From positions 124,001-188,000 of the IMG/VR virus record IMGVR_UViG_3300042934_000547: a DNA stretch of 64,000 nt, one strand, 5' to 3'. A program made the translations under genes and the position numbers. Positions 47,341-56,752 of this stretch are shown piece after piece (the stretch's first letter is position 1; each line of letters starts with the position of its first letter). Under the pieces are notes generated by a model that was not told the origin of the DNA, made no database searches, and was given only the letters and a program-made list of their open reading frames with translations.

Positions 47341-48030
47341 TTAATTAAAAATTCGGTTATAAAATGTAGTGGTGGTTTCTTCTGTATTATTATCTTTATG
47401 AGACACTTTCTTAGTTAATAATCCATTTTCGTCATATGTATATTTAGTTAACTTTCCATATTGACATGTTGAGTACCATTGATTTAATGGATTATCAATG
47501 TAAAAATTATGTATAACAACAGTATCTGTTTTTATTACCGTTGCTTTATATTCTTTCTTACGTGAAGAATTTGGGAAATAAGTAAAGTCCAATTTTCTGC
47601 CATTTATGATAAAAGTGTATGTATCATTAACTATAGTAGCATCCATGATTGTTTTTTCCTTTTTGGGATCTATATCACCAAAAATAGAATCAGTACTACC
47701 CTTAGTGATCTGTATTATTCTCCCTAACTCATCATATGAAAATATCCATATAAAAAGGTTTACACCATCTACGTCTTTTGTATACTCCCTACCTACTTCC
47801 AATTTACCGTTTTCATCATAGACATATTCGCCACACATTGTAGAACTTATTTTAATGATTTTGTCAGTATCATTGAAGTATTCGATATTTTCTGACGATC
47901 TCGTATACTTCTTTTCCCTCCTTACAATTCTACCGAGTCTATCGGTAAACATCAGTGAATGAAATTGTTCCTCACCATTATTCTTTCTCTTTGTTACCAA
48001 AATTACTTTCTTTTCCAAATTTTTGTTCAT
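47341..48030 (-). CDS. Stand-alone YD-repeat early protein (paralog of 46386..47207)
   Basis: FHSLMFTDRLGRIVR, YVYDENGKL, YDELGRI, YTYDENGLL; TATATTATA at 48087-48095. Confidence 0.75.
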   Translation of the reverse strand: MNKNLEKKVILVTKRKNNGEEQFHSLMFTDRLGRIVRREKKYTRSSENIEYFNDTDKIIKISSTMCGEYVYDENGKLEVGREYTKDVDGVNLFIWIFSYDELGRIIQITKGSTDSIFGDIDPKKEKTIMDATIVNDTYTFIINGRKLDFTYFPNSSRKKEYKATVIKTDTVVIHNFYIDNPLNQWYSTCQYGKLTKYTYDENGLLTKKVSHKDNNTEETTTTFYNRIFN

Positions 48031-48125: not shown

Positions 48126-48149
48126 GGAGGATGAAATTAATCATCCTCC
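48126..48149 (-). terminator. Intrinsic terminator after dut
   Basis: GGAGGATGA-aattaa-TCATCCTCC. Confidence 0.8.
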
Positions 48150-49274: not shown

Positions 49275-50006
49275 TTAAAAATATTGATACGAATCAATAT
49301 AATCAGTGGTAGATAATGAAACTAATCTTTGAACCCCATCTTCAAATTTATCACTATATATTGGAGTGAAGAGTTTAATCTTACCAAAATTATCAATGTA
49401 AGATAATAGTGAACCGAATTTGTCATAGATATATGTATCTACAGCATCTTCTTTATTTGGTTCAGATACGATTAAATATTTCTTTGTTCTACCTGTTGAT
49501 AGAGTCTCATATCTGTATAATTGAGTAATATTAGTTTTTAAATCTCTTTCTTTCGTAATTCTTCTGTTCTCGTCATAATCATAATCTATTGAAACAAATC
49601 CTCTCTGATTTATTAATAGATCACCATCATCATATGTATATTTAGAGATCATTCTACCTAAGTCATCGCACTCCTCTATTAATAAACAAGGATCATTATT
49701 GTCATATTTATAGAAGATTTCGTGTATCTTATTTTTTATACTATTTGTTGAATGTATAAGCCTTTGTAGTTCATCATAATAACTTTCTTTAATAACGTTT
49801 AAATTATTTTTAAAGTTAACTGCTGTGACAGATTTTGTATTATTATCAGAAAAAACTGTCATTTGTTCCCACTCTGGTTTAGCTGTAGGGTTCTTAAAAC
49901 TCTGCATCCTAATTACCTCATTTTCTCCATTGTAGAATACCTTATCTACTGAATTATTTGAATACTTTCTTGTTACGATTTTTGTAACTTGGTTTTTGTT
50001 AATCAT
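49275..50006 (-). CDS. Stand-alone YD-repeat protein
   Basis: YYDELQRL, YTYDDGDL, YDYDENRRI, YIYDKFGSL. Confidence 0.75.
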   Translation of the reverse strand: MINKNQVTKIVTRKYSNNSVDKVFYNGENEVIRMQSFKNPTAKPEWEQMTVFSDNNTKSVTAVNFKNNLNVIKESYYDELQRLIHSTNSIKNKIHEIFYKYDNNDPCLLIEECDDLGRMISKYTYDDGDLLINQRGFVSIDYDYDENRRITKERDLKTNITQLYRYETLSTGRTKKYLIVSEPNKEDAVDTYIYDKFGSLLSYIDNFGKIKLFTPIYSDKFEDGVQRLVSLSTTDYIDSYQYF

Positions 50007-50062
50007 TTTGTTTGTCTCCCTTTATATTTTATTTTTAATAGAATATGATTCTATTATTACTT

Positions 50063-50896
50063 CTAAACGTATAATATCTGTTTTATGTAATTGCTGGATT
50101 TAATCTCAATTAATTGATTGTTTCTGGTATAATATAATTTATATGAGTCCTTAAATACCGTTTTATCGTCTTCGATTATTTCTGTAAATATTCTATCACC
50201 TTTATCATTAAATTCAGTAAAAGTAATATCAGTTATGCGTTTATTTTGTTCATTCTTATATTGCATAAATTCTTTATTTGTAGCTTCCTTACCATTTTCA
50301 TGATATGTGTATTCAGTAACATGAATTTTATCTGCATCATTATCATATGTATGAGTTATAGATTTAATCTGGTTCTCATCATTGTAATAATAATCAGTAA
50401 CAATACCATTTTTGTGATTTATGTATCGTGTCAAATCATTTCTGATATTATAATAGTATGATGATAATATTCTACCATTCTCATCACATATCTCACTTAT
50501 CATATCACTGTTTTCAAAATACTTCATTATCACAATATTATCATCTGAAACTAATTCTGATAATAATCCACTTCCATTATATTTATATAATGTGATTTTA
50601 GGTACACCAGTTTTGATATCAAAATCAAATGTACTAATTATCTTACCAGACAAATCATATTCTGACTTAGATAATACAACTCCATTAGTATTATACTTAG
50701 TTTCAATAATTCTAGTATTACTATGAGTAAAAACTGTTCTAAGTTCTTTAATAAGTTTACCCTTAGTATTAACCTCTTTCTCATATAGAGATTGACCTGA
50801 GTCATTAAACATCTCAAGTCCAATTTTAGAAATCTTACCTTCTCCATCATTAAATTTAGTTGTAACTATCTTAGTTACCTTATTTGAATTCATCAT
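50063..50896 (-). CDS. Stand-alone YD-repeat early protein
   Basis: EYDLSGKI, YKYNGSGLL, YYYNDENQI, YTYHENGK; TATATTATA at 50963-50971. Confidence 0.75.
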   Translation of the reverse strand: MMNSNKVTKIVTTKFNDGEGKISKIGLEMFNDSGQSLYEKEVNTKGKLIKELRTVFTHSNTRIIETKYNTNGVVLSKSEYDLSGKIISTFDFDIKTGVPKITLYKYNGSGLLSELVSDDNIVIMKYFENSDMISEICDENGRILSSYYYNIRNDLTRYINHKNGIVTDYYYNDENQIKSITHTYDNDADKIHVTEYTYHENGKEATNKEFMQYKNEQNKRITDITFTEFNDKGDRIFTEIIEDDKTVFKDSYKLYYTRNNQLIEIKSSNYIKQILYV

Positions 50897-51018
50897 TCGA
50901 ATTCCCCCTGTTATTAAGATTATTAATTCTATCCTATATTAGATTAGAATCAATTTCATAAATATAATATATACTTATAAGTGTTTTTATGGAATTGAAA
51001 TGATTAAGTGATTTAATT

Positions 51019-51417
51019 GGGTAGAAGAATTTTTTACCCTTCTCTTCTCCTTTCCCCCCTTAAACCCCCCTTTCCTCATCTCATCCCATTCACCCCTCTC
51101 CCTTATAATCTAGATTTAAATTATATTTATTTATTCTTTATTATTCTACCATCAATTCCATTATTCTTTATTTATCTTTAATTTTATTTATTTTTCTTCT
51201 TTCTCTTTATTTCTTTTCTTTATTCTTCCTGAGCTTCATCCATGAACCCCAATCTCGCTTCGCTCGTTCATTGGGTTCATGTCTCTACGAGACATTTTAG
51301 AGTCCAAAGCCCCCTATAGAAAACACCCGGTAGTAAAAAACTACCGAATGCGGGGGCTTGGACATAGTTACAACGCTCGACAATATTAGTATCAACTTTT
51401 GTGATTATCCTATTGTT
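51019..51417 (-). other. Non-coding structured locus: candidate replication origin / primer RNA
   Basis: Late-type motif 51406-51417, three GC-rich hairpins 51241-51363, about 190-nt purine tract, G-runs 51037-51102; no ORF. Confidence 0.55.
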
Positions 51418-51491
51418 ATTCGTAAATATTTTTTATAAATTTTATAGTCCTTCAACAATACTATAAATAATCCTTAGGAGGATATAAATAA

Positions 51492-52106
51492 ATGAATATA
51501 AAAAATAAGATTAGGTTATTCTTTCATAAATATAATTTAGATAATATATTTCTATTCTTTAATAATGATATAGATTTAGAAACTAAAACGACCATTCTGA
51601 GTGAGGAAGAAATATTAAGCAATCCTTTAGCTAGTTTATGTCAGCACCCATTTTATTCTATTATAGATATAAGCTTTGTTAATCAAAAAATAGTAATCAG
51701 TCTAGAGTCAATTATAACTCTAACCATATTACATGATTGTATTCAGAATATTTATAATAGAACGTCTGACTATATATTCACATTTGACATCACACGGTCT
51801 TATAAGATAGATAAGCTCGTAATCGATGTGGAAATACAATTCAGTACGACTCAGCAGGCTTATAAGTATTTACTCCTTTTACTGACTGACCTTAACCTAG
51901 AACTTATAGAAAGTGTAACTGTAGAACCTAAAAATATTTACGAGCATGATGATCTACTAAAATATTTCAATTCATATCAAGTAAATTATGAATCATATAT
52001 ACGATATTTGGATTCTAGTAAAACTAAACCTCAAATCAAATATATTATTGATGTACTTCATAATCATAATGATATGATTAAAAATATTCGTGATTTAATA
52101 CATTAG
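51492..52106 (+). CDS. Hypothetical protein
   Basis: GGAGG RBS; AACA-N6-TA at 51454-51465. Confidence 0.65.
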   Translation: MNIKNKIRLFFHKYNLDNIFLFFNNDIDLETKTTILSEEEILSNPLASLCQHPFYSIIDISFVNQKIVISLESIITLTILHDCIQNIYNRTSDYIFTFDITRSYKIDKLVIDVEIQFSTTQQAYKYLLLLLTDLNLELIESVTVEPKNIYEHDDLLKYFNSYQVNYESYIRYLDSSKTKPQIKYIIDVLHNHNDMIKNIRDLIH

Positions 52107-52118
52107 AAAAAAAAATAA

Positions 52119-52144
52119 ACCTCTAGGACTTTAATCCTAGAGGT
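52119..52144. terminator. Bidirectional terminator
   Basis: ACCTCTAGGA-ctttaa-TCCTAGAGGT. Confidence 0.8.
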
Positions 52145-52155
52145 ATCTTTATTTT

Positions 52156-53175
52156 CTATAAATCCGTATATATTTCTTCTAATAGATTTCCATCCATATC
52201 ATAAATTTTTCTATGCTTTTGATACTTATCAAATCTTACAGCTTCCTTATTCCATTTAGAATAAATAAACTCTTTAAAATGACATTCTATATCATTATAA
52301 ATGAAATCTCTTTCCATCATCAACTTAGAGAAGTTTCCATCATGGAAATATATACTTCCACCATCAGGCATGATGATATTTTTGTATTCATAGTCGTCGA
52401 TTTTTTCTGTTACCATTACTACATCATGTGGTAACGATTCTATAGTAACGGTGTGCCCCTGATTAGCAGCTACTATTGTGTAAGAACTAGGACGTCTTTG
52501 AAGTACCTCAAAATTATCAGTTGGTTTTAATAATATCTTATCCCTAATTTTACTATAATTGATCTTACCATAAACTGATGAAACTAAATCTCTGAATGAA
52601 GAGTAATTACCATCTGTTAAAATAGATGTACCGTTCTCAGTGATATTAGCTAATAAGCCACTCTTGCTATAGAAATATTTAAACTCTTTCTTAGCTGGTA
52701 TTATGACTATCATTCGTTCCACATCGTGACGATATGATGTGTATGAATATATCATATGAGATACAGTACGTTGGTCGTTTAAACCTAAAACGCTTTTAAC
52801 TAACAACAATTTGGTATCCATATTATTATAAATGCTTATTGTTGCCTTACCAGTAACTTCATCATATATTATAACAGTATTACCATATTGCACTCCCTTT
52901 ATTTCACGTTTAGTAACTTCGCCAGTAACAAGATTTGTCGTCCTATGTATTTGGTGTGGTAAATCTTCACGCAGACTCATGTATTCAACATTTAATTCAG
53001 TTGATGCTACAAAGTCAGTCTTTGTCTTTATTCCACCATAGTTATTATAAATCTCTTCCTTTAGAAGTTTACCCTGAGACTCTTCGGTCCCCTGTTCATA
53101 AAGATATGTATGTCGTAACTTTGATTGTCCATCTACTAATGCATATACTTTCCTTAATTCATTTTTTCCTTCCAT
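52156..53175 (-). CDS. Beta-rich, YD-repeat-like early protein
   Basis: IIYDEVTGK, YFYSKSGLL, IYDMDGNLL; AAGGAGG before MEGK; TATATTATA at 53214-53222. Confidence 0.6.
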   Translation of the reverse strand: MEGKNELRKVYALVDGQSKLRHTYLYEQGTEESQGKLLKEEIYNNYGGIKTKTDFVASTELNVEYMSLREDLPHQIHRTTNLVTGEVTKREIKGVQYGNTVIIYDEVTGKATISIYNNMDTKLLLVKSVLGLNDQRTVSHMIYSYTSYRHDVERMIVIIPAKKEFKYFYSKSGLLANITENGTSILTDGNYSSFRDLVSSVYGKINYSKIRDKILLKPTDNFEVLQRRPSSYTIVAANQGHTVTIESLPHDVVMVTEKIDDYEYKNIIMPDGGSIYFHDGNFSKLMMERDFIYNDIECHFKEFIYSKWNKEAVRFDKYQKHRKIYDMDGNLLEEIYTDL

Positions 53176-53243
53176 TTGTATCCTCCTTATATAACCTTTT
53201 AACTTATCGTTTATATAATATATACCCATATCAAATTTTGAAA

Positions 53244-53314
53244 ATAAAAGGGAGGAGTGAAATTAATCACTCCCAACAAGATGATTTTTATTACTTTACT
53301 TATAACCGAGACTT
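53244..53314 (-). ncRNA. Candidate small RNA (about 70 nt)
   Basis: AACT-N6-TA at 53314-53325, terminator 53254-53273, no minus-strand ORF. Confidence 0.3.
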
Positions 53315-53339
53315 ATGATATAGTTATATATATTTAGAA

Positions 53340-53510
53340 AAAAAAATATCGGGTAGGAAATCAATCCTACCCATTAGGCATGTGTAAAAGTAATTGATTT
53401 ATATGAATTAAAAAAGGAACGTTGTTGATGGAAAACAAATTTTAGGAGTTATACATAACAAATTGTCTTCACATGCCTATTTTATTTAACTGAAATTTTC
53501 TTATTCAATT
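53340..53510 (-). ncRNA. Candidate small RNA (about 170 nt)
   Basis: AACA-N6-TA at 53510-53521; 10-bp long-range stem TAGGCATGTG/CACATGCCTA; terminator 53351-53372 plus T-run. Confidence 0.45.
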
Positions 53511-53530
53511 ACCTTATTGTTATTACCCTA

Positions 53531-53644
53531 TTAATTATTATTACGTTGAATTGGTATAATATTATGAGTAAATTTGAATAGTAATTGTTCAGACTCTTCC
53601 ACCATCAATGCCTCTAGTATGAATTTCTTTTCATTAATTGTCAT
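53531..53644 (-). CDS. Small protein (37 aa; not in ORF track)
   Basis: MTINEKKFILEALMVEESEQLLFKFTHNIIPIQRNNN; starts just downstream of the preceding stop; AAGGA RBS. Confidence 0.5.
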   Translation of the reverse strand: MTINEKKFILEALMVEESEQLLFKFTHNIIPIQRNNN

Positions 53645-53647
53645 AGT

Positions 53648-55464: not shown

Positions 55465-55535
55465 TAAAATATATTATAAATATATATTATAACAATGAAT
55501 TAAACAAATTTAAAATTTTAGGAGGAACAACAAAG

Positions 55536-56719: not shown

Positions 56720-56752
56720 TGTAAAAATTAACTTTTTTGAATATATATTATA
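56720..56752 (+). promoter_or_regulatory. Bipartite early-type promoter TGTAAA-N18-TATATTATA
   Basis: TGTAAA 56720-56725, TATATTATA 56744-56752. Confidence 0.8.

What the first reader, a model, noticed from the sequence alone, without database searches (positions are those of the whole stretch)
51019..51417. Candidate transcription-primed origin: promoter, hairpins, purine tract, then G-tracts
Seen: the largest non-coding gap, at a divergence point. On the minus strand an AACA-N6-TA motif (51406-51417) precedes a branched GC-rich stem (51302-51363) and hairpins 51279-51295 and 51241-51281 (loop containing CTCGCTTCGCTCG). These are followed by about 190 nt of almost C-free purine-rich sequence ending in GGGAGAGGGG...GGG...GGGGGGTTTAAGGGGGG. 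Established: G-rich transcripts form persistent R-loops/G4 that prime ColE1 and mtDNA replication, with RNase H processing. The phage encodes RNase HI 6 kb away. Inference: an R-loop origin or a roughly 390-nt ncRNA.
Basis: partly seen in the sequence, partly recalled or inferred. Interest (0 to 1): 0.75.

Follow-up and report, generated by a model that had tools for sequence, protein, structure and literature searches.

The report
Promoter-fed G-run and AT-tract site
The largest gene-free gap of an uncultured 232-kb phage related to Bacillus phage AR9 holds a phage-type promoter that reads through a folded RNA domain and a 200-base C-free stretch into a one-per-genome pair of G-runs, a layout that recurs in three distant cultured relatives and most likely marks a transcription-activated replication origin, which would be the first proposed for this phage group.

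Summary
The gap is the largest in the 231,975-bp genome. The hairpin domain is the most stable minus-strand fold. The C-free tract holds the two longest G-free runs on the + strand. The G-tract is the top G4Hunter site and the top site for RNA:DNA hybrid stability. The AACA-N6-TA motif at 51417-51406 is a good match to the AR9-type late promoter, which I validated in this genome.

The downstream gene has its own early promoter below the G-runs, so about 450 nt is a separate non-coding unit. It matches no Rfam family and has no sequence homologue. A relative with 93% identity keeps the G-block but not the hairpins.

The layout recurs elsewhere. Listeria phage LPJP1, Staphylococcus phage S6 and Bacillus phage BpSp each have exactly one paired G-run, in non-coding DNA. 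Each lies next to one of that genome's most AT-rich tracts and downstream of a late-promoter match.

My best reading is a transcription-activated, R-loop-type origin (about 0.4). The rivals are a free ncRNA or long leader, and a pac site, since the motif fits the herpesvirus pac1 definition. Transcription, R-loop formation and initiation are all untested.

The parts
51406..51417 (-). AR9-type late (non-virion RNAP) promoter match AACA-ATAGGA-TA. The predicted TSS is A at 51406.
   Evidence: Sequence. PWM score 10.6, top 1e-4 of all genome positions, and one of 3 intergenic orphan sites. Consensus taken from PMC5312081 and validated in this genome.
51231..51378 (-). Structured domain forming a four-way junction. 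It has a closing helix (51378-51364 / 51243-51231), a long hairpin (51363-51302), a 7-bp hairpin (51295-51279), and a hairpin (51278-51244) with GCGAAGC at its apex (51263-51257).
   Evidence: It is the most stable minus-strand 130-nt fold in the genome. Seven G-U pairs exist only in the minus-strand fold. No Rfam match at E up to 10. Single copy in the genome, and no hit in 5 related phages with covariance model R1.
51323..51351 (-). Inner 12-bp hairpin followed by UUUUCUAU. It looks like a terminator but is nested inside the long hairpin.
51114..51230 (-). A/U/G-only, very AT-rich tract. It is a 117-nt G-free run on the + strand, with GC about 14%.
   Evidence: Longest G-free run in the genome. 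Among the 0.02% most AT-rich 120-nt windows. Degenerate repeats of about 10 nt but no significant 10-bp phasing.
51040..51110 (-). G-rich, C-free block: GGGAGAGGGG..GGG..GGGGGGTTTAAGGGGGG..
   Evidence: 0 G on the + strand in 71 nt. Genome maximum for G4Hunter and for hybrid-minus-duplex stability, -25.7 kcal/mol per 100 nt, z -5.0. Kept up to about 51106 in the 93% relative.
51054..51070 (-). Paired G-runs G6-TTTAA-G6 (C6-TTAAA-C6 on the + strand). Unique in the genome.
   Evidence: Unique counterparts in LPJP1, S6 and BpSp.
51019..51039 (.). Weak hairpin GGGTA..TACCC that resembles a decayed copy of the genome's terminator family. The pyrimidine tail is on the + strand only.
   Evidence: The relative has a 1-nt deletion at 51028.
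50957..50973 (-). AR9-type early (virion RNAP) promoter TATATATTAT-N6-G. The predicted TSS is G at 50957, 61 nt upstream of ATG 50896.
   Evidence: About 45 copies in the genome. Consensus from PMC5312081. Identical in the relative's contig L030.
51454..51465 (+). Late promoter AACA-ATACTA-TA for ORF 51492-52106, back-to-back with the minus-strand late promoter.
   Evidence: PWM score 15.5; the TSS is 26 nt before the ATG.
51492..52106 (+). 204-aa ORFan. Its N-terminal two thirds lie in the same segment that is replaced in the relative as the hairpins and AT tract.
   Evidence: No Pfam or PHROG hit. No homologue among 1.8 billion representatives. Coverage in run X2 resumes at 51927.
52119..52144 (.). 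Strong bidirectional terminator that shields the locus from upstream minus-strand transcription.

Best explanation
The gap contains a separate non-coding transcription unit that ends in a cis-acting DNA site. The phage's own non-virion RNA polymerase starts at the late promoter (TSS about 51406, minus strand). It transcribes a 150-nt four-way-junction domain, then about 200 nt in which the RNA has no C.

That composition has two consequences. The RNA tail cannot fold on itself. Its hybrid with the pyrimidine template is more stable than the DNA duplex, most strongly at the unique G6-TTTAA-G6 site.

I think the most likely function is a transcription-activated replication origin. The purine-rich transcript would stay annealed as an R-loop, helped by G-run structure on the displaced strand. 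The adjacent 86%-AT tract would supply the easily melted DNA. The RNA 3' end, native or cut by RNase H, or a helicase/primase loaded on the displaced strand, would start DNA synthesis.

Shown: the anatomy, its uniqueness, the promoter match, the thermodynamic extremes, and recurrence of the late-promoter / paired-G-run / extreme-AT-tract layout in three distant relatives.

Inferred: that it is transcribed on the minus strand, that an R-loop forms, and that replication starts here.
For: Independence of the unit:
- The gene 50063-50896 has its own early promoter downstream of the G-runs.
- A bidirectional terminator lies upstream at 52119-52144.
- The only small ORF over the G-tract (51079-50987) is frameshifted in the relative by a 1-nt deletion at 51028.

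Promoter:
- The late consensus is validated here (48 vs 17.7 expected).
- The site is in the top 1e-4 and is one of 3 intergenic orphans.
- It sits 28 nt upstream of the genome's most structured minus-strand segment.

Composition:
- The two longest G-free runs in the genome.
- The most favourable hybrid-versus-duplex energy in the genome, z -5.0 per 100 nt, next best z -3.3.
- The top G4Hunter site.
- An AT tract in the top 0.02% of the genome.

Recurrence in distant relatives (RNAP beta' fragment under 30% identical to this phage):
- A paired G-run (G of 5 or more, 1-8 nt, G of 5 or more) occurs exactly once in this phage, LPJP1, S6 and BpSp. Block shuffles predict 0-0.15 per genome.
- All four are in non-coding DNA.
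- Each lies within 400 nt of a 120-nt window in the most AT-rich 0.007-0.02% of its genome.
- In this phage, LPJP1 and S6 the site lies in a large divergent gap (595, 1053 and 524 nt). It is 335, 274 and 209 nt downstream of a late-promoter match on the same strand, with PWM scores 10.6, 10.0 and 12.1, each in the top 1e-4.
- The late consensus is enriched upstream of genes in all five phages tested.

Other support:
- Transcripts made by the phage's own or a phage-redirected polymerase prime the T7 and T4 origins, and ColE1 and mtDNA use G-rich persistent hybrids (established knowledge).
- The phage encodes RNase H, a DnaB-like helicase and gyrase.
- Contigs from RNA libraries fall only on 50763-51461 within a 3.5-kb stretch.
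Against: - There is no direct evidence of transcription strand, R-loop or initiation.
- GC skew gives no signal.
- In the relative that is 93% identical elsewhere, 51107-51926 (AT tract, hairpins, promoter, and two thirds of the ORF) is not found at 88% or more. Only the G-block is kept.
- AR9 and Fusobacterium phage JD-Fnp6 lack any paired G-run. AR9 has no comparable strand-asymmetric non-coding tract.
- The order of parts differs. Here the AT tract precedes the G-runs in the transcript; in LPJP1, S6 and BpSp it follows them.
- Shuffle z-scores do not favour the minus strand.
- One RNA-library contig reaches 51461, upstream of the predicted TSS at 51406, so it is either DNA or another transcript.
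- The RNA-library evidence amounts to a few fragments. Three of the five runs were found by querying this very region.
- A one-per-genome site fits a packaging signal equally well.
Confidence: 0.4

Rival explanations
1. Free non-coding RNA, or a long structured late leader. The late promoter makes a 300-400-nt RNA consisting of a 5' four-way-junction domain and an unstructured C-free purine tail. This RNA would act in trans, for example as a sponge for an RNA-binding protein or for pyrimidine-rich RNA. Alternatively it is the 510-nt late-phase 5' leader of gene 50063-50896. In this reading no DNA-level function is involved.
For: - Late-promoter match.
- Most structured minus-strand segment in the genome, with G-U pairs only in that sense.
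- No C in the tail, so the tail stays single-stranded.
- No strong terminator before the early promoter, so read-through into the gene is plausible.
- AR9 genes that are expressed continuously carry both early and late promoters (PMC5312081).
- Contigs from RNA libraries lie on 51114-51461 and 50763-51068, with none on the flanking genes.
Against: - The structured domain has no homologue anywhere: Rfam and model R1 in 5 relatives. It is also not kept in the 93% relative.
- The parts that do recur across distant phages are the unique G-pair and the AT tract, not the fold. That points to a one-per-genome DNA site.
- Late promoters in this genome normally sit 20-30 nt from the ATG.
- Dual promoters elsewhere in the genome are compact.
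Confidence: 0.27
2. Packaging (pac) signal. The unique C6-TTAAA-C6 site would be where terminase recognises and first cuts the concatemer before headful packaging.
For: - The motif fits the published definition of herpesvirus pac1, a 3-7 bp A- or T-rich region flanked by poly(C) (PMC10763189). The S6 site (C5-TAAAT-C5) fits it too. Herpesvirus and tailed-phage terminases are homologous (established knowledge).
- It occurs once per genome in four phages.
- The related Staphylococcus jumbo phages were reported to have pac-like circular permutation (bioRxiv 10.1101/2020.12.14.422802).
- One contig from run X5 ends at 51114, 44 nt from the motif, with one unmatched end base.
Against: - The resemblance is to a short, low-information motif from GC-rich genomes.
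- This reading gives no role to the promoter, the hairpins, the 200-nt strand asymmetry or the AT tract.
- The probable large terminase gene is about 87 kb away, and no small terminase is known.
- No terminus data exist for this phage. The 127-bp terminal repeat of the record may be an assembly overlap (my inference).
Confidence: 0.18
3. No dedicated function. The gap would be a recombination-prone, fast-evolving spacer between two promoters, with its odd composition produced by slippage of low-complexity repeats.
For: - The segment is replaced or strongly diverged in a close relative.
- It contains degenerate repeats of about 10 nt.
- The neighbouring ORF is an ORFan.
Against: - The locus is the genome-wide extreme on five separate measures.
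- The relative's replacement sequence is still G-free over the 26 nt that are visible.
- The layout recurs in three distant phages.
Confidence: 0.08

Closest known systems
Transcription-primed origins of phages T7 (primary origin: phage-RNAP promoters plus an AT-rich region) and T4 (oriF/oriG: middle promoter plus a downstream unwinding element forming an R-loop)
   Same: A promoter used by the phage-specified transcription machinery reads into an unusually AT-rich, easily melted segment in a non-coding region. Helicase and RNase H genes are present in the genome.
   Different: Here and in the relatives the AT tract is paired with a unique G5-6/W2-5/G5-6 site. In this phage there is also a 200-nt C-free transcript and a 150-nt folded domain. 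The polymerase would be a multisubunit non-virion RNAP. Nothing has been tested experimentally.
ColE1 RNA II origin and the mitochondrial LSP-CSBII primer site
   Same: A 5' hairpin domain is followed by a G-rich RNA segment expected to form a persistent hybrid with a C-rich template. The two closely spaced G6 runs resemble CSBII. RNase H processing is plausible.
   Different: There is no sequence homology, and no antisense RNA I-like partner was seen. The G-runs lie about 335 nt from the TSS. No canonical four-run G4 motif with short loops exists. The resemblance is recalled from knowledge, not tested.
AR9 late (non-virion RNAP) promoter, AACA-N6-T[A/G] (PMC5312081)
   Same: The consensus is matched exactly. 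It is enriched upstream of genes in this phage and in LPJP1, S6, BpSp and AR9.
   Different: This copy is an orphan, about 510 nt from the next start codon rather than the usual 20-30 nt. This phage encodes a dUTPase, so it probably has thymine DNA, unlike uracil-containing AR9 (my inference).
Herpesvirus pac1 cleavage/packaging motif
   Same: It literally fits the description 'a 3-7 bp A/T-rich region flanked by poly(C)' (PMC10763189).
   Different: No pac2 partner, terminal repeat or mapped terminus is known. The context of promoter, hairpins and strand-asymmetric tract has no counterpart in herpesviruses.

Membership tests
AR9-type late promoter (non-virion RNAP) | Sequence AACA-N6-T[A/G], with the last base as the TSS | tested here: met
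   51417-51406 minus strand; PWM score 10.6, top 1e-4.
AR9-type late promoter (non-virion RNAP) | The consensus is actually used by this phage, shown by orientation-specific enrichment upstream of genes | tested here: met
   48 sense vs 19 antisense vs 17.7 expected, peaking 20-30 nt before the ATG. The same holds in 4 relatives.
AR9-type late promoter (non-virion RNAP) | A transcript 5' end mapped at the predicted TSS | not testable with these tools
   Only unstranded Logan contigs were available. One contig extends past the predicted TSS.
Transcription-primed (R-loop) replication origin (T4/T7/ColE1/mtDNA type) | A promoter directing transcription into the site | tested here: met
   Sequence level only. 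Recurs in LPJP1 and S6.
Transcription-primed (R-loop) replication origin (T4/T7/ColE1/mtDNA type) | A persistent RNA:DNA hybrid at the site | not testable with these tools
   Propensity only: the nearest-neighbour hybrid-minus-duplex energy is the genome extreme, z -5.0.
Transcription-primed (R-loop) replication origin (T4/T7/ColE1/mtDNA type) | An easily unwound AT-rich element next to the site | tested here: met
   Top 0.02% most AT-rich 120-nt windows here, and top 0.007-0.02% in LPJP1, S6 and BpSp.
Transcription-primed (R-loop) replication origin (T4/T7/ColE1/mtDNA type) | Replication actually starts there (copy-number peak, RNA-DNA junctions, skew switch) | tested here: inconclusive
   The orientation-corrected GC skew has no step at the locus, R2 0.001. 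Skew follows gene strand. No coverage or junction data are available.
Canonical G-quadruplex motif | Four runs of 3 or more G with loops of 12 nt or less | tested here: not met
   No match anywhere in the genome. A form with one 14-nt loop is possible. G4Hunter -2.12 is the genome maximum.
Any Rfam RNA family | Covariance-model match | tested here: not met
   No hit at gathering score in the window and nothing meaningful at E up to 10 in the gap.
Herpesvirus-type pac1 packaging motif | A 3-7 bp A/T-rich core flanked by poly(C)/poly(G) | tested here: met
   C6-TTAAA-C6 at 51054-51070. Definition taken from PMC10763189.
Herpesvirus-type pac1 packaging motif | A genome terminus or terminase cleavage at a fixed distance from the motif | not testable with these tools
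   No raw virion reads were available. There is only one contig end at 51114 in run X5.
Retron / DGR non-coding RNA | A reverse transcriptase encoded in the genome | tested here: not met
   No PF00078 match in the genome.

The most novel reading that the evidence does not exclude
AR9-like jumbo phages of Gram-positive hosts share a previously unrecognised one-per-genome module. It consists of an orphan late promoter, a G5-6/W2-5/G5-6 site, and the genome's most AT-rich tract. In this reading the module is their replication origin, fired when the phage's own non-virion multisubunit RNA polymerase lays down a persistent G-rich RNA:DNA hybrid. That would be a phage counterpart of the mitochondrial LSP/CSBII primer system.
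Probability: 0.3. Interest if true: 0.8.

Novelty: new variant of a known kind. Interest (0 to 1): 0.62.

Why it matters
A 2026 review of jumbo phages that I searched mentions no mapped replication origin (PMC13282480). The Staphylococcus jumbo-phage preprint reports pac-like permutation but names no pac site.

This locus gives a concrete sequence signature: a unique paired G-run, an extreme AT tract and an orphan late promoter. The same signature is present in cultured phages (S6, LPJP1, BpSp), so the idea can be tested at the bench rather than only in a metagenomic contig.

If it is an origin fired by the phage's own multisubunit RNA polymerase, it links the unusual transcription system of these phages to DNA replication. 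It would also supply a part for engineering them. If it is instead a packaging signal of pac1 type, it would be a notable parallel between phage and herpesvirus terminase recognition.

Tried and rejected
- DNA similarity: nothing in the phage collection for the gap or for 13 kb around it.
- Relatives found through flanking proteins: none in IMG/VR, JGI metagenomes, GTDB genomes, or the 5.8-billion and 1.8-billion protein sets. The only find was a 991-bp Logan contig, L030, 93% identical, which stops at 51004.
- DNA pattern scans of IMG/VR: the C6TTAAAC6 pattern gave 26 unrelated chance hits. The inner hairpin pattern gave none.
- Rfam, tRNA and tmRNA: nothing in the window or the genome. Nothing in the other large gaps or in the LPJP1 gap.
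- Retron or DGR: no reverse transcriptase.
- Covariance model R1 of the hairpin domain: no hit in AR9, BpSp, LPJP1, S6 or JD-Fnp6, and only itself in the own genome.
- BLAST of the locus against AR9: low-complexity matches only.
- Bent DNA: the roughly 10-nt repeats show no significant 10-bp phasing, 35th percentile. Dropped.
- GCGAAGC mini-hairpin at the apex of hairpin 51278-51244: six copies in the genome, so not significant on its own. Kept only as a lead.
- Small ORFs in the gap: none is convincing. The 30-codon ORF over the G-tract is frameshifted in the relative.
- Plus-strand transcript: there is no phage-type promoter on the + strand upstream of the tract. Only a lone TATAAT at 51104-51109, with no -35 element, lies just before the contig start at 51114. 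Not excluded.
- ORF 51492-52106: no family, no homologue, and a poor structure model.
- Synteny of the G-pair loci: the flanking proteins of LPJP1 and S6 are not homologous to those here.
- RNA-library enrichment: I first read it as strong. On reflection, runs X6-X8 were selected by querying this region, and X4 and X5 contribute only about 1 and 2-3 fragments. It is suggestive only.

Full report
**What the window is.** The window is bases 124001-188000 of a 231,975-bp IMG/VR virus record with about 31% GC. Its 127-bp terminal repeat may be an assembly overlap (my inference).

- It encodes gyrase A and B, a DnaB-like helicase and a fragment of a multisubunit RNA polymerase beta' subunit. It also encodes RNase H and a dUTPase.
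- By tblastn the RNAP fragment is under 30% identical to those of phiR1-37, Bacillus phages BpSp, AR9 and PBS1, Listeria phage LPJP1 and Staphylococcus jumbo phages.
- It is therefore a very divergent member of the AR9/phiKZ-like phages that carry two multisubunit RNA polymerases.
- No close relative exists in any collection I could search.

**The phage's promoters.** The published AR9 early promoter is AAATATATATTAT-N6-G(+1) and the late promoter is AACA-N6-T[A/G](+1) (PMC5312081).

- The early motif occurs about 45 times here, nearly always 30-110 nt upstream of a gene and in the gene's orientation.
- The late motif is enriched in sense orientation upstream of genes: 48 observed, 19 antisense, 17.7 expected. 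It peaks 20-30 nt before the start codon.
- A weight matrix built from 31 such sites gives 46 sites scoring 10.5 or more in the genome. Of these, 33 are upstream of genes and only 3 are intergenic orphans.

- The 595-nt gap 50897-51491 is the largest in the genome.
- The hairpins fold far better than shuffled controls, as RNA or DNA and on either strand.
- Together with a closing helix the hairpins form a four-way junction at 51378-51231.
- That segment is the single most stable minus-strand 130-nt fold of 5,392 windows after GC correction. It ranks 12th on the plus strand.
- Seven G-U pairs exist only in the minus-strand fold. The shuffle z-scores do not favour that strand, so folding alone does not settle the strand.
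- The C-free tract corresponds to the two longest G-free runs of the + strand, 117 and 85 nt, separated by one G at 51113.
- The two C6 runs are the only runs of six or more G/C in the genome.
- No canonical short-loop G4 motif exists, yet the site has the genome's highest G4Hunter score.
- With nearest-neighbour energies, an RNA carrying the minus-strand sequence would pair with its template 25.7 kcal/mol per 100 nt better than the DNA duplex does. That is z -5.0, and the next best site is -15.9.
- The AT-rich part (GC 14%) is in the top 0.02% of 120-nt windows.

**Transcription-unit logic.**

- The gene to the left (50063-50896) has its own early promoter at 50973-50964, with a predicted TSS at 50957. 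This lies below the G-runs.
- The ORF to the right (51492-52106) has a strong late promoter at 51454-51465.
- A strong bidirectional terminator at 52119-52144 shields the gap from upstream minus-strand transcription.
- About 450 nt (51010-51450) therefore serves neither neighbour.
It sits back-to-back with the + strand late promoter and 28 nt upstream of the structured domain.
- Ten sites of that score lie inside genes, about 2e-5 per base and strand. The chance of one within 60 nt of the domain on the right strand is therefore of order 1e-3.
- No small ORF in the gap is convincing. The 30-codon ORF over the G-tract is frameshifted in a relative.

**Evidence from sequencing runs.**

- *The relative in run X2.* One run, at depth about 2,500, holds a relative that is about 93% identical. 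It covers 49500-51106 and 51927-53000 but not 51107-51926 at 88% identity or more. The G-block and early promoter are therefore kept, which Logan contig L030 also shows. The AT tract, hairpins, promoters and two thirds of the ORFan are replaced or strongly diverged. The 26 nt that follow the breakpoint in the relative are again G-free.
- *The wastewater RNA libraries.* Five RNA-seq libraries from wastewater hold 31-mers of the gap. When laid on the sequence, run X5 gives contigs at 51114-51325 (100% identical) and 51312-51461. Run X4 gives contigs at 50763-50913 and 50919-51068. Nothing falls on the flanking genes.
- *Why this is only suggestive.* Three of the runs were selected by querying the gap itself. 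The rest amount to a few fragments. The contigs carry no strand information. The tool flags X4 as probably DNA. One contig runs 55 nt past the predicted TSS.

**Other tests.**

- GC skew follows gene orientation. After removing that effect there is no step at the locus, R2 0.001. This neither supports nor refutes an origin.
- There is no Rfam family, no reverse transcriptase and no tRNA or tmRNA.
- The probable large terminase gene is about 87 kb away.
- The neighbouring ORFan has no homologue among 1.8 billion representatives.

**Comparison with distant relatives.**

- A covariance model of the hairpin domain finds only itself. BLAST against AR9 finds only low-complexity matches. So there is no sequence conservation.
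- At the level of layout there is a clear recurrence.

| Phage | Paired G-run | Position |
|---|---|---|
| This phage | G6-TTTAA-G6 | window 51054-51070 |
| LPJP1 | G6-TT-G6 | 76116-76129 |
| S6 | G5-ATTTA-G5 | 266865-266879 |
| BpSp | G5-TA-G5 | 203698-203709 |

- A pair of G-runs (5 or more G, 1-8 nt, 5 or more G) occurs exactly once in each of these four genomes. It does not occur in AR9 or JD-Fnp6. Shuffles within 1-kb blocks predict 0-0.15 per genome.
- All four sites are non-coding.
- In this phage, LPJP1 and S6 the site is the top G4Hunter site of the genome.
- In the same three it lies in a large divergent gap (595, 1,053 and 524 nt). It follows a late-promoter match on the same strand by 335, 274 and 209 nt. 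The matrix scores are 10.6, 10.0 and 12.1, each in the top 1e-4 of its genome. In BpSp a consensus match lies 15 nt upstream.
- In all four genomes one of the most AT-rich 120-nt windows (top 0.007-0.02%) lies within 400 nt of the site.
- The late consensus is enriched upstream of genes in all five phages tested.
- The flanking proteins are not homologous. What recurs is the site, not a syntenic block.
- One difference: in LPJP1, S6 and BpSp the AT tract follows the G-pair in the transcript, whereas here it precedes it.

**Interpretation.** The conserved core is a one-per-genome G-pair next to an extreme AT tract, with a late promoter reading into it. That is the logic of a cis-acting DNA site rather than of a diffusible RNA.

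- A promoter plus an unwinding element is how the T4 and T7 origins work. A G-rich persistent hybrid is how ColE1 and mtDNA make primers (established knowledge).
- In this phage the idea is reinforced by the 200-nt C-free transcript, the most R-loop-prone sequence in the genome.
- I therefore rank a transcription-activated origin first, at about 0.4.
- A free ncRNA or long late leader comes second, at about 0.27. The fold is real and outstanding, but it is neither conserved nor kept in the close relative.
- A packaging signal comes third, at about 0.18. The motif literally fits the herpesvirus pac1 definition (PMC10763189), and related Staphylococcus jumbo phages package from a pac-like site. 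This reading explains none of the surrounding features.
- A functionless spacer is unlikely, at about 0.08.

**Novelty.** A 2026 review of jumbo phages that I searched mentions no mapped origin. The Staphylococcus jumbo-phage preprint names no pac site. The signature described here is not in Rfam or in the papers I read. Its presence in cultured phages makes it directly testable.

Noticed in passing
whole genome; in the window for example 50957-50973(-), 55476-55491, 56737-56752: About 45 copies of the AR9-type early (virion RNAP) promoter TATATATTAT-N6-G. Many are preceded by TGTAAAA about 15 nt upstream and by a terminator, so they form terminator-promoter cassettes.
   Followed up: partly
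window 53230-53647 (orphan late-promoter matches with TSS at 53510 and 53536, minus strand): A second large gap (418 nt) holds the only other intergenic orphan late-promoter matches (scores 13.5 and 10.9). Terminator-like hairpins follow at 53373-53350 and 53274-53253. This could be another small non-coding transcript or a long leader of gene 52156-53229.
   Followed up: no
window 51107-51926: In a relative that is 93% identical elsewhere, this segment is absent at 88% identity or more. It covers the AT tract, the hairpins, both late promoters and the N-terminal two thirds of ORFan 51492-52106. The ORF's C-terminal third is kept. A cis element and the specificity domain of its neighbouring protein may be swapped as one module, as with lambda ori and the O protein. 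This is a recalled analogy and was not tested.
   Followed up: partly
window 47341-48030, 49275-50006, 50063-50896 (all minus strand): Three neighbouring genes give weak RHS-repeat hits (only 47341-48030 exceeds Pfam's curated cut-off; the other two fall below it), and look like a small paralogous family of unknown function.
   Followed up: no
genome-wide; window for example 48126-48149, 52119-52144, 53350-53373: Terminators form a recognisable family, with a stem such as GGGTAGG or GGAGTG, an AT-rich 6-8-nt loop such as ATTAAT, and often both an A-run and a T-run, making them bidirectional. There are 22 terminator-like sites in 14 kb against 3.3 expected.
   Followed up: partly
genome 217927-218505, 72921-73473, 12203-12661 (outside the window): The next largest gaps lie between convergent genes and contain GC-rich segments. 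No Rfam family matches them at E up to 0.1.
   Followed up: partly
window 51100-51125: Two overlapping 8-bp palindromes (ATCTAGAT, ATTTAAAT) form an AT hairpin exactly at the junction of the C-rich and T-rich tracts. Homology with the relative breaks at 51106, and an RNA-library contig ends at 51114 with one unmatched base.
   Followed up: no
window 50983-51001 (minus strand): A weak resemblance to a CRISPR repeat model (RF01315, E 2.3). It overlaps the upstream part of the early promoter and is probably chance.
   Followed up: no
L098 (LPJP1 75618-76670) and S6 266709-267055 plus 1-177: These divergent gaps carry the counterpart G-pair sites. The LPJP1 gap also has a direct repeat GGGACTC x2 and several GC-rich hairpins. 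The S6 record was opened by its authors inside this gap.
   Followed up: partly
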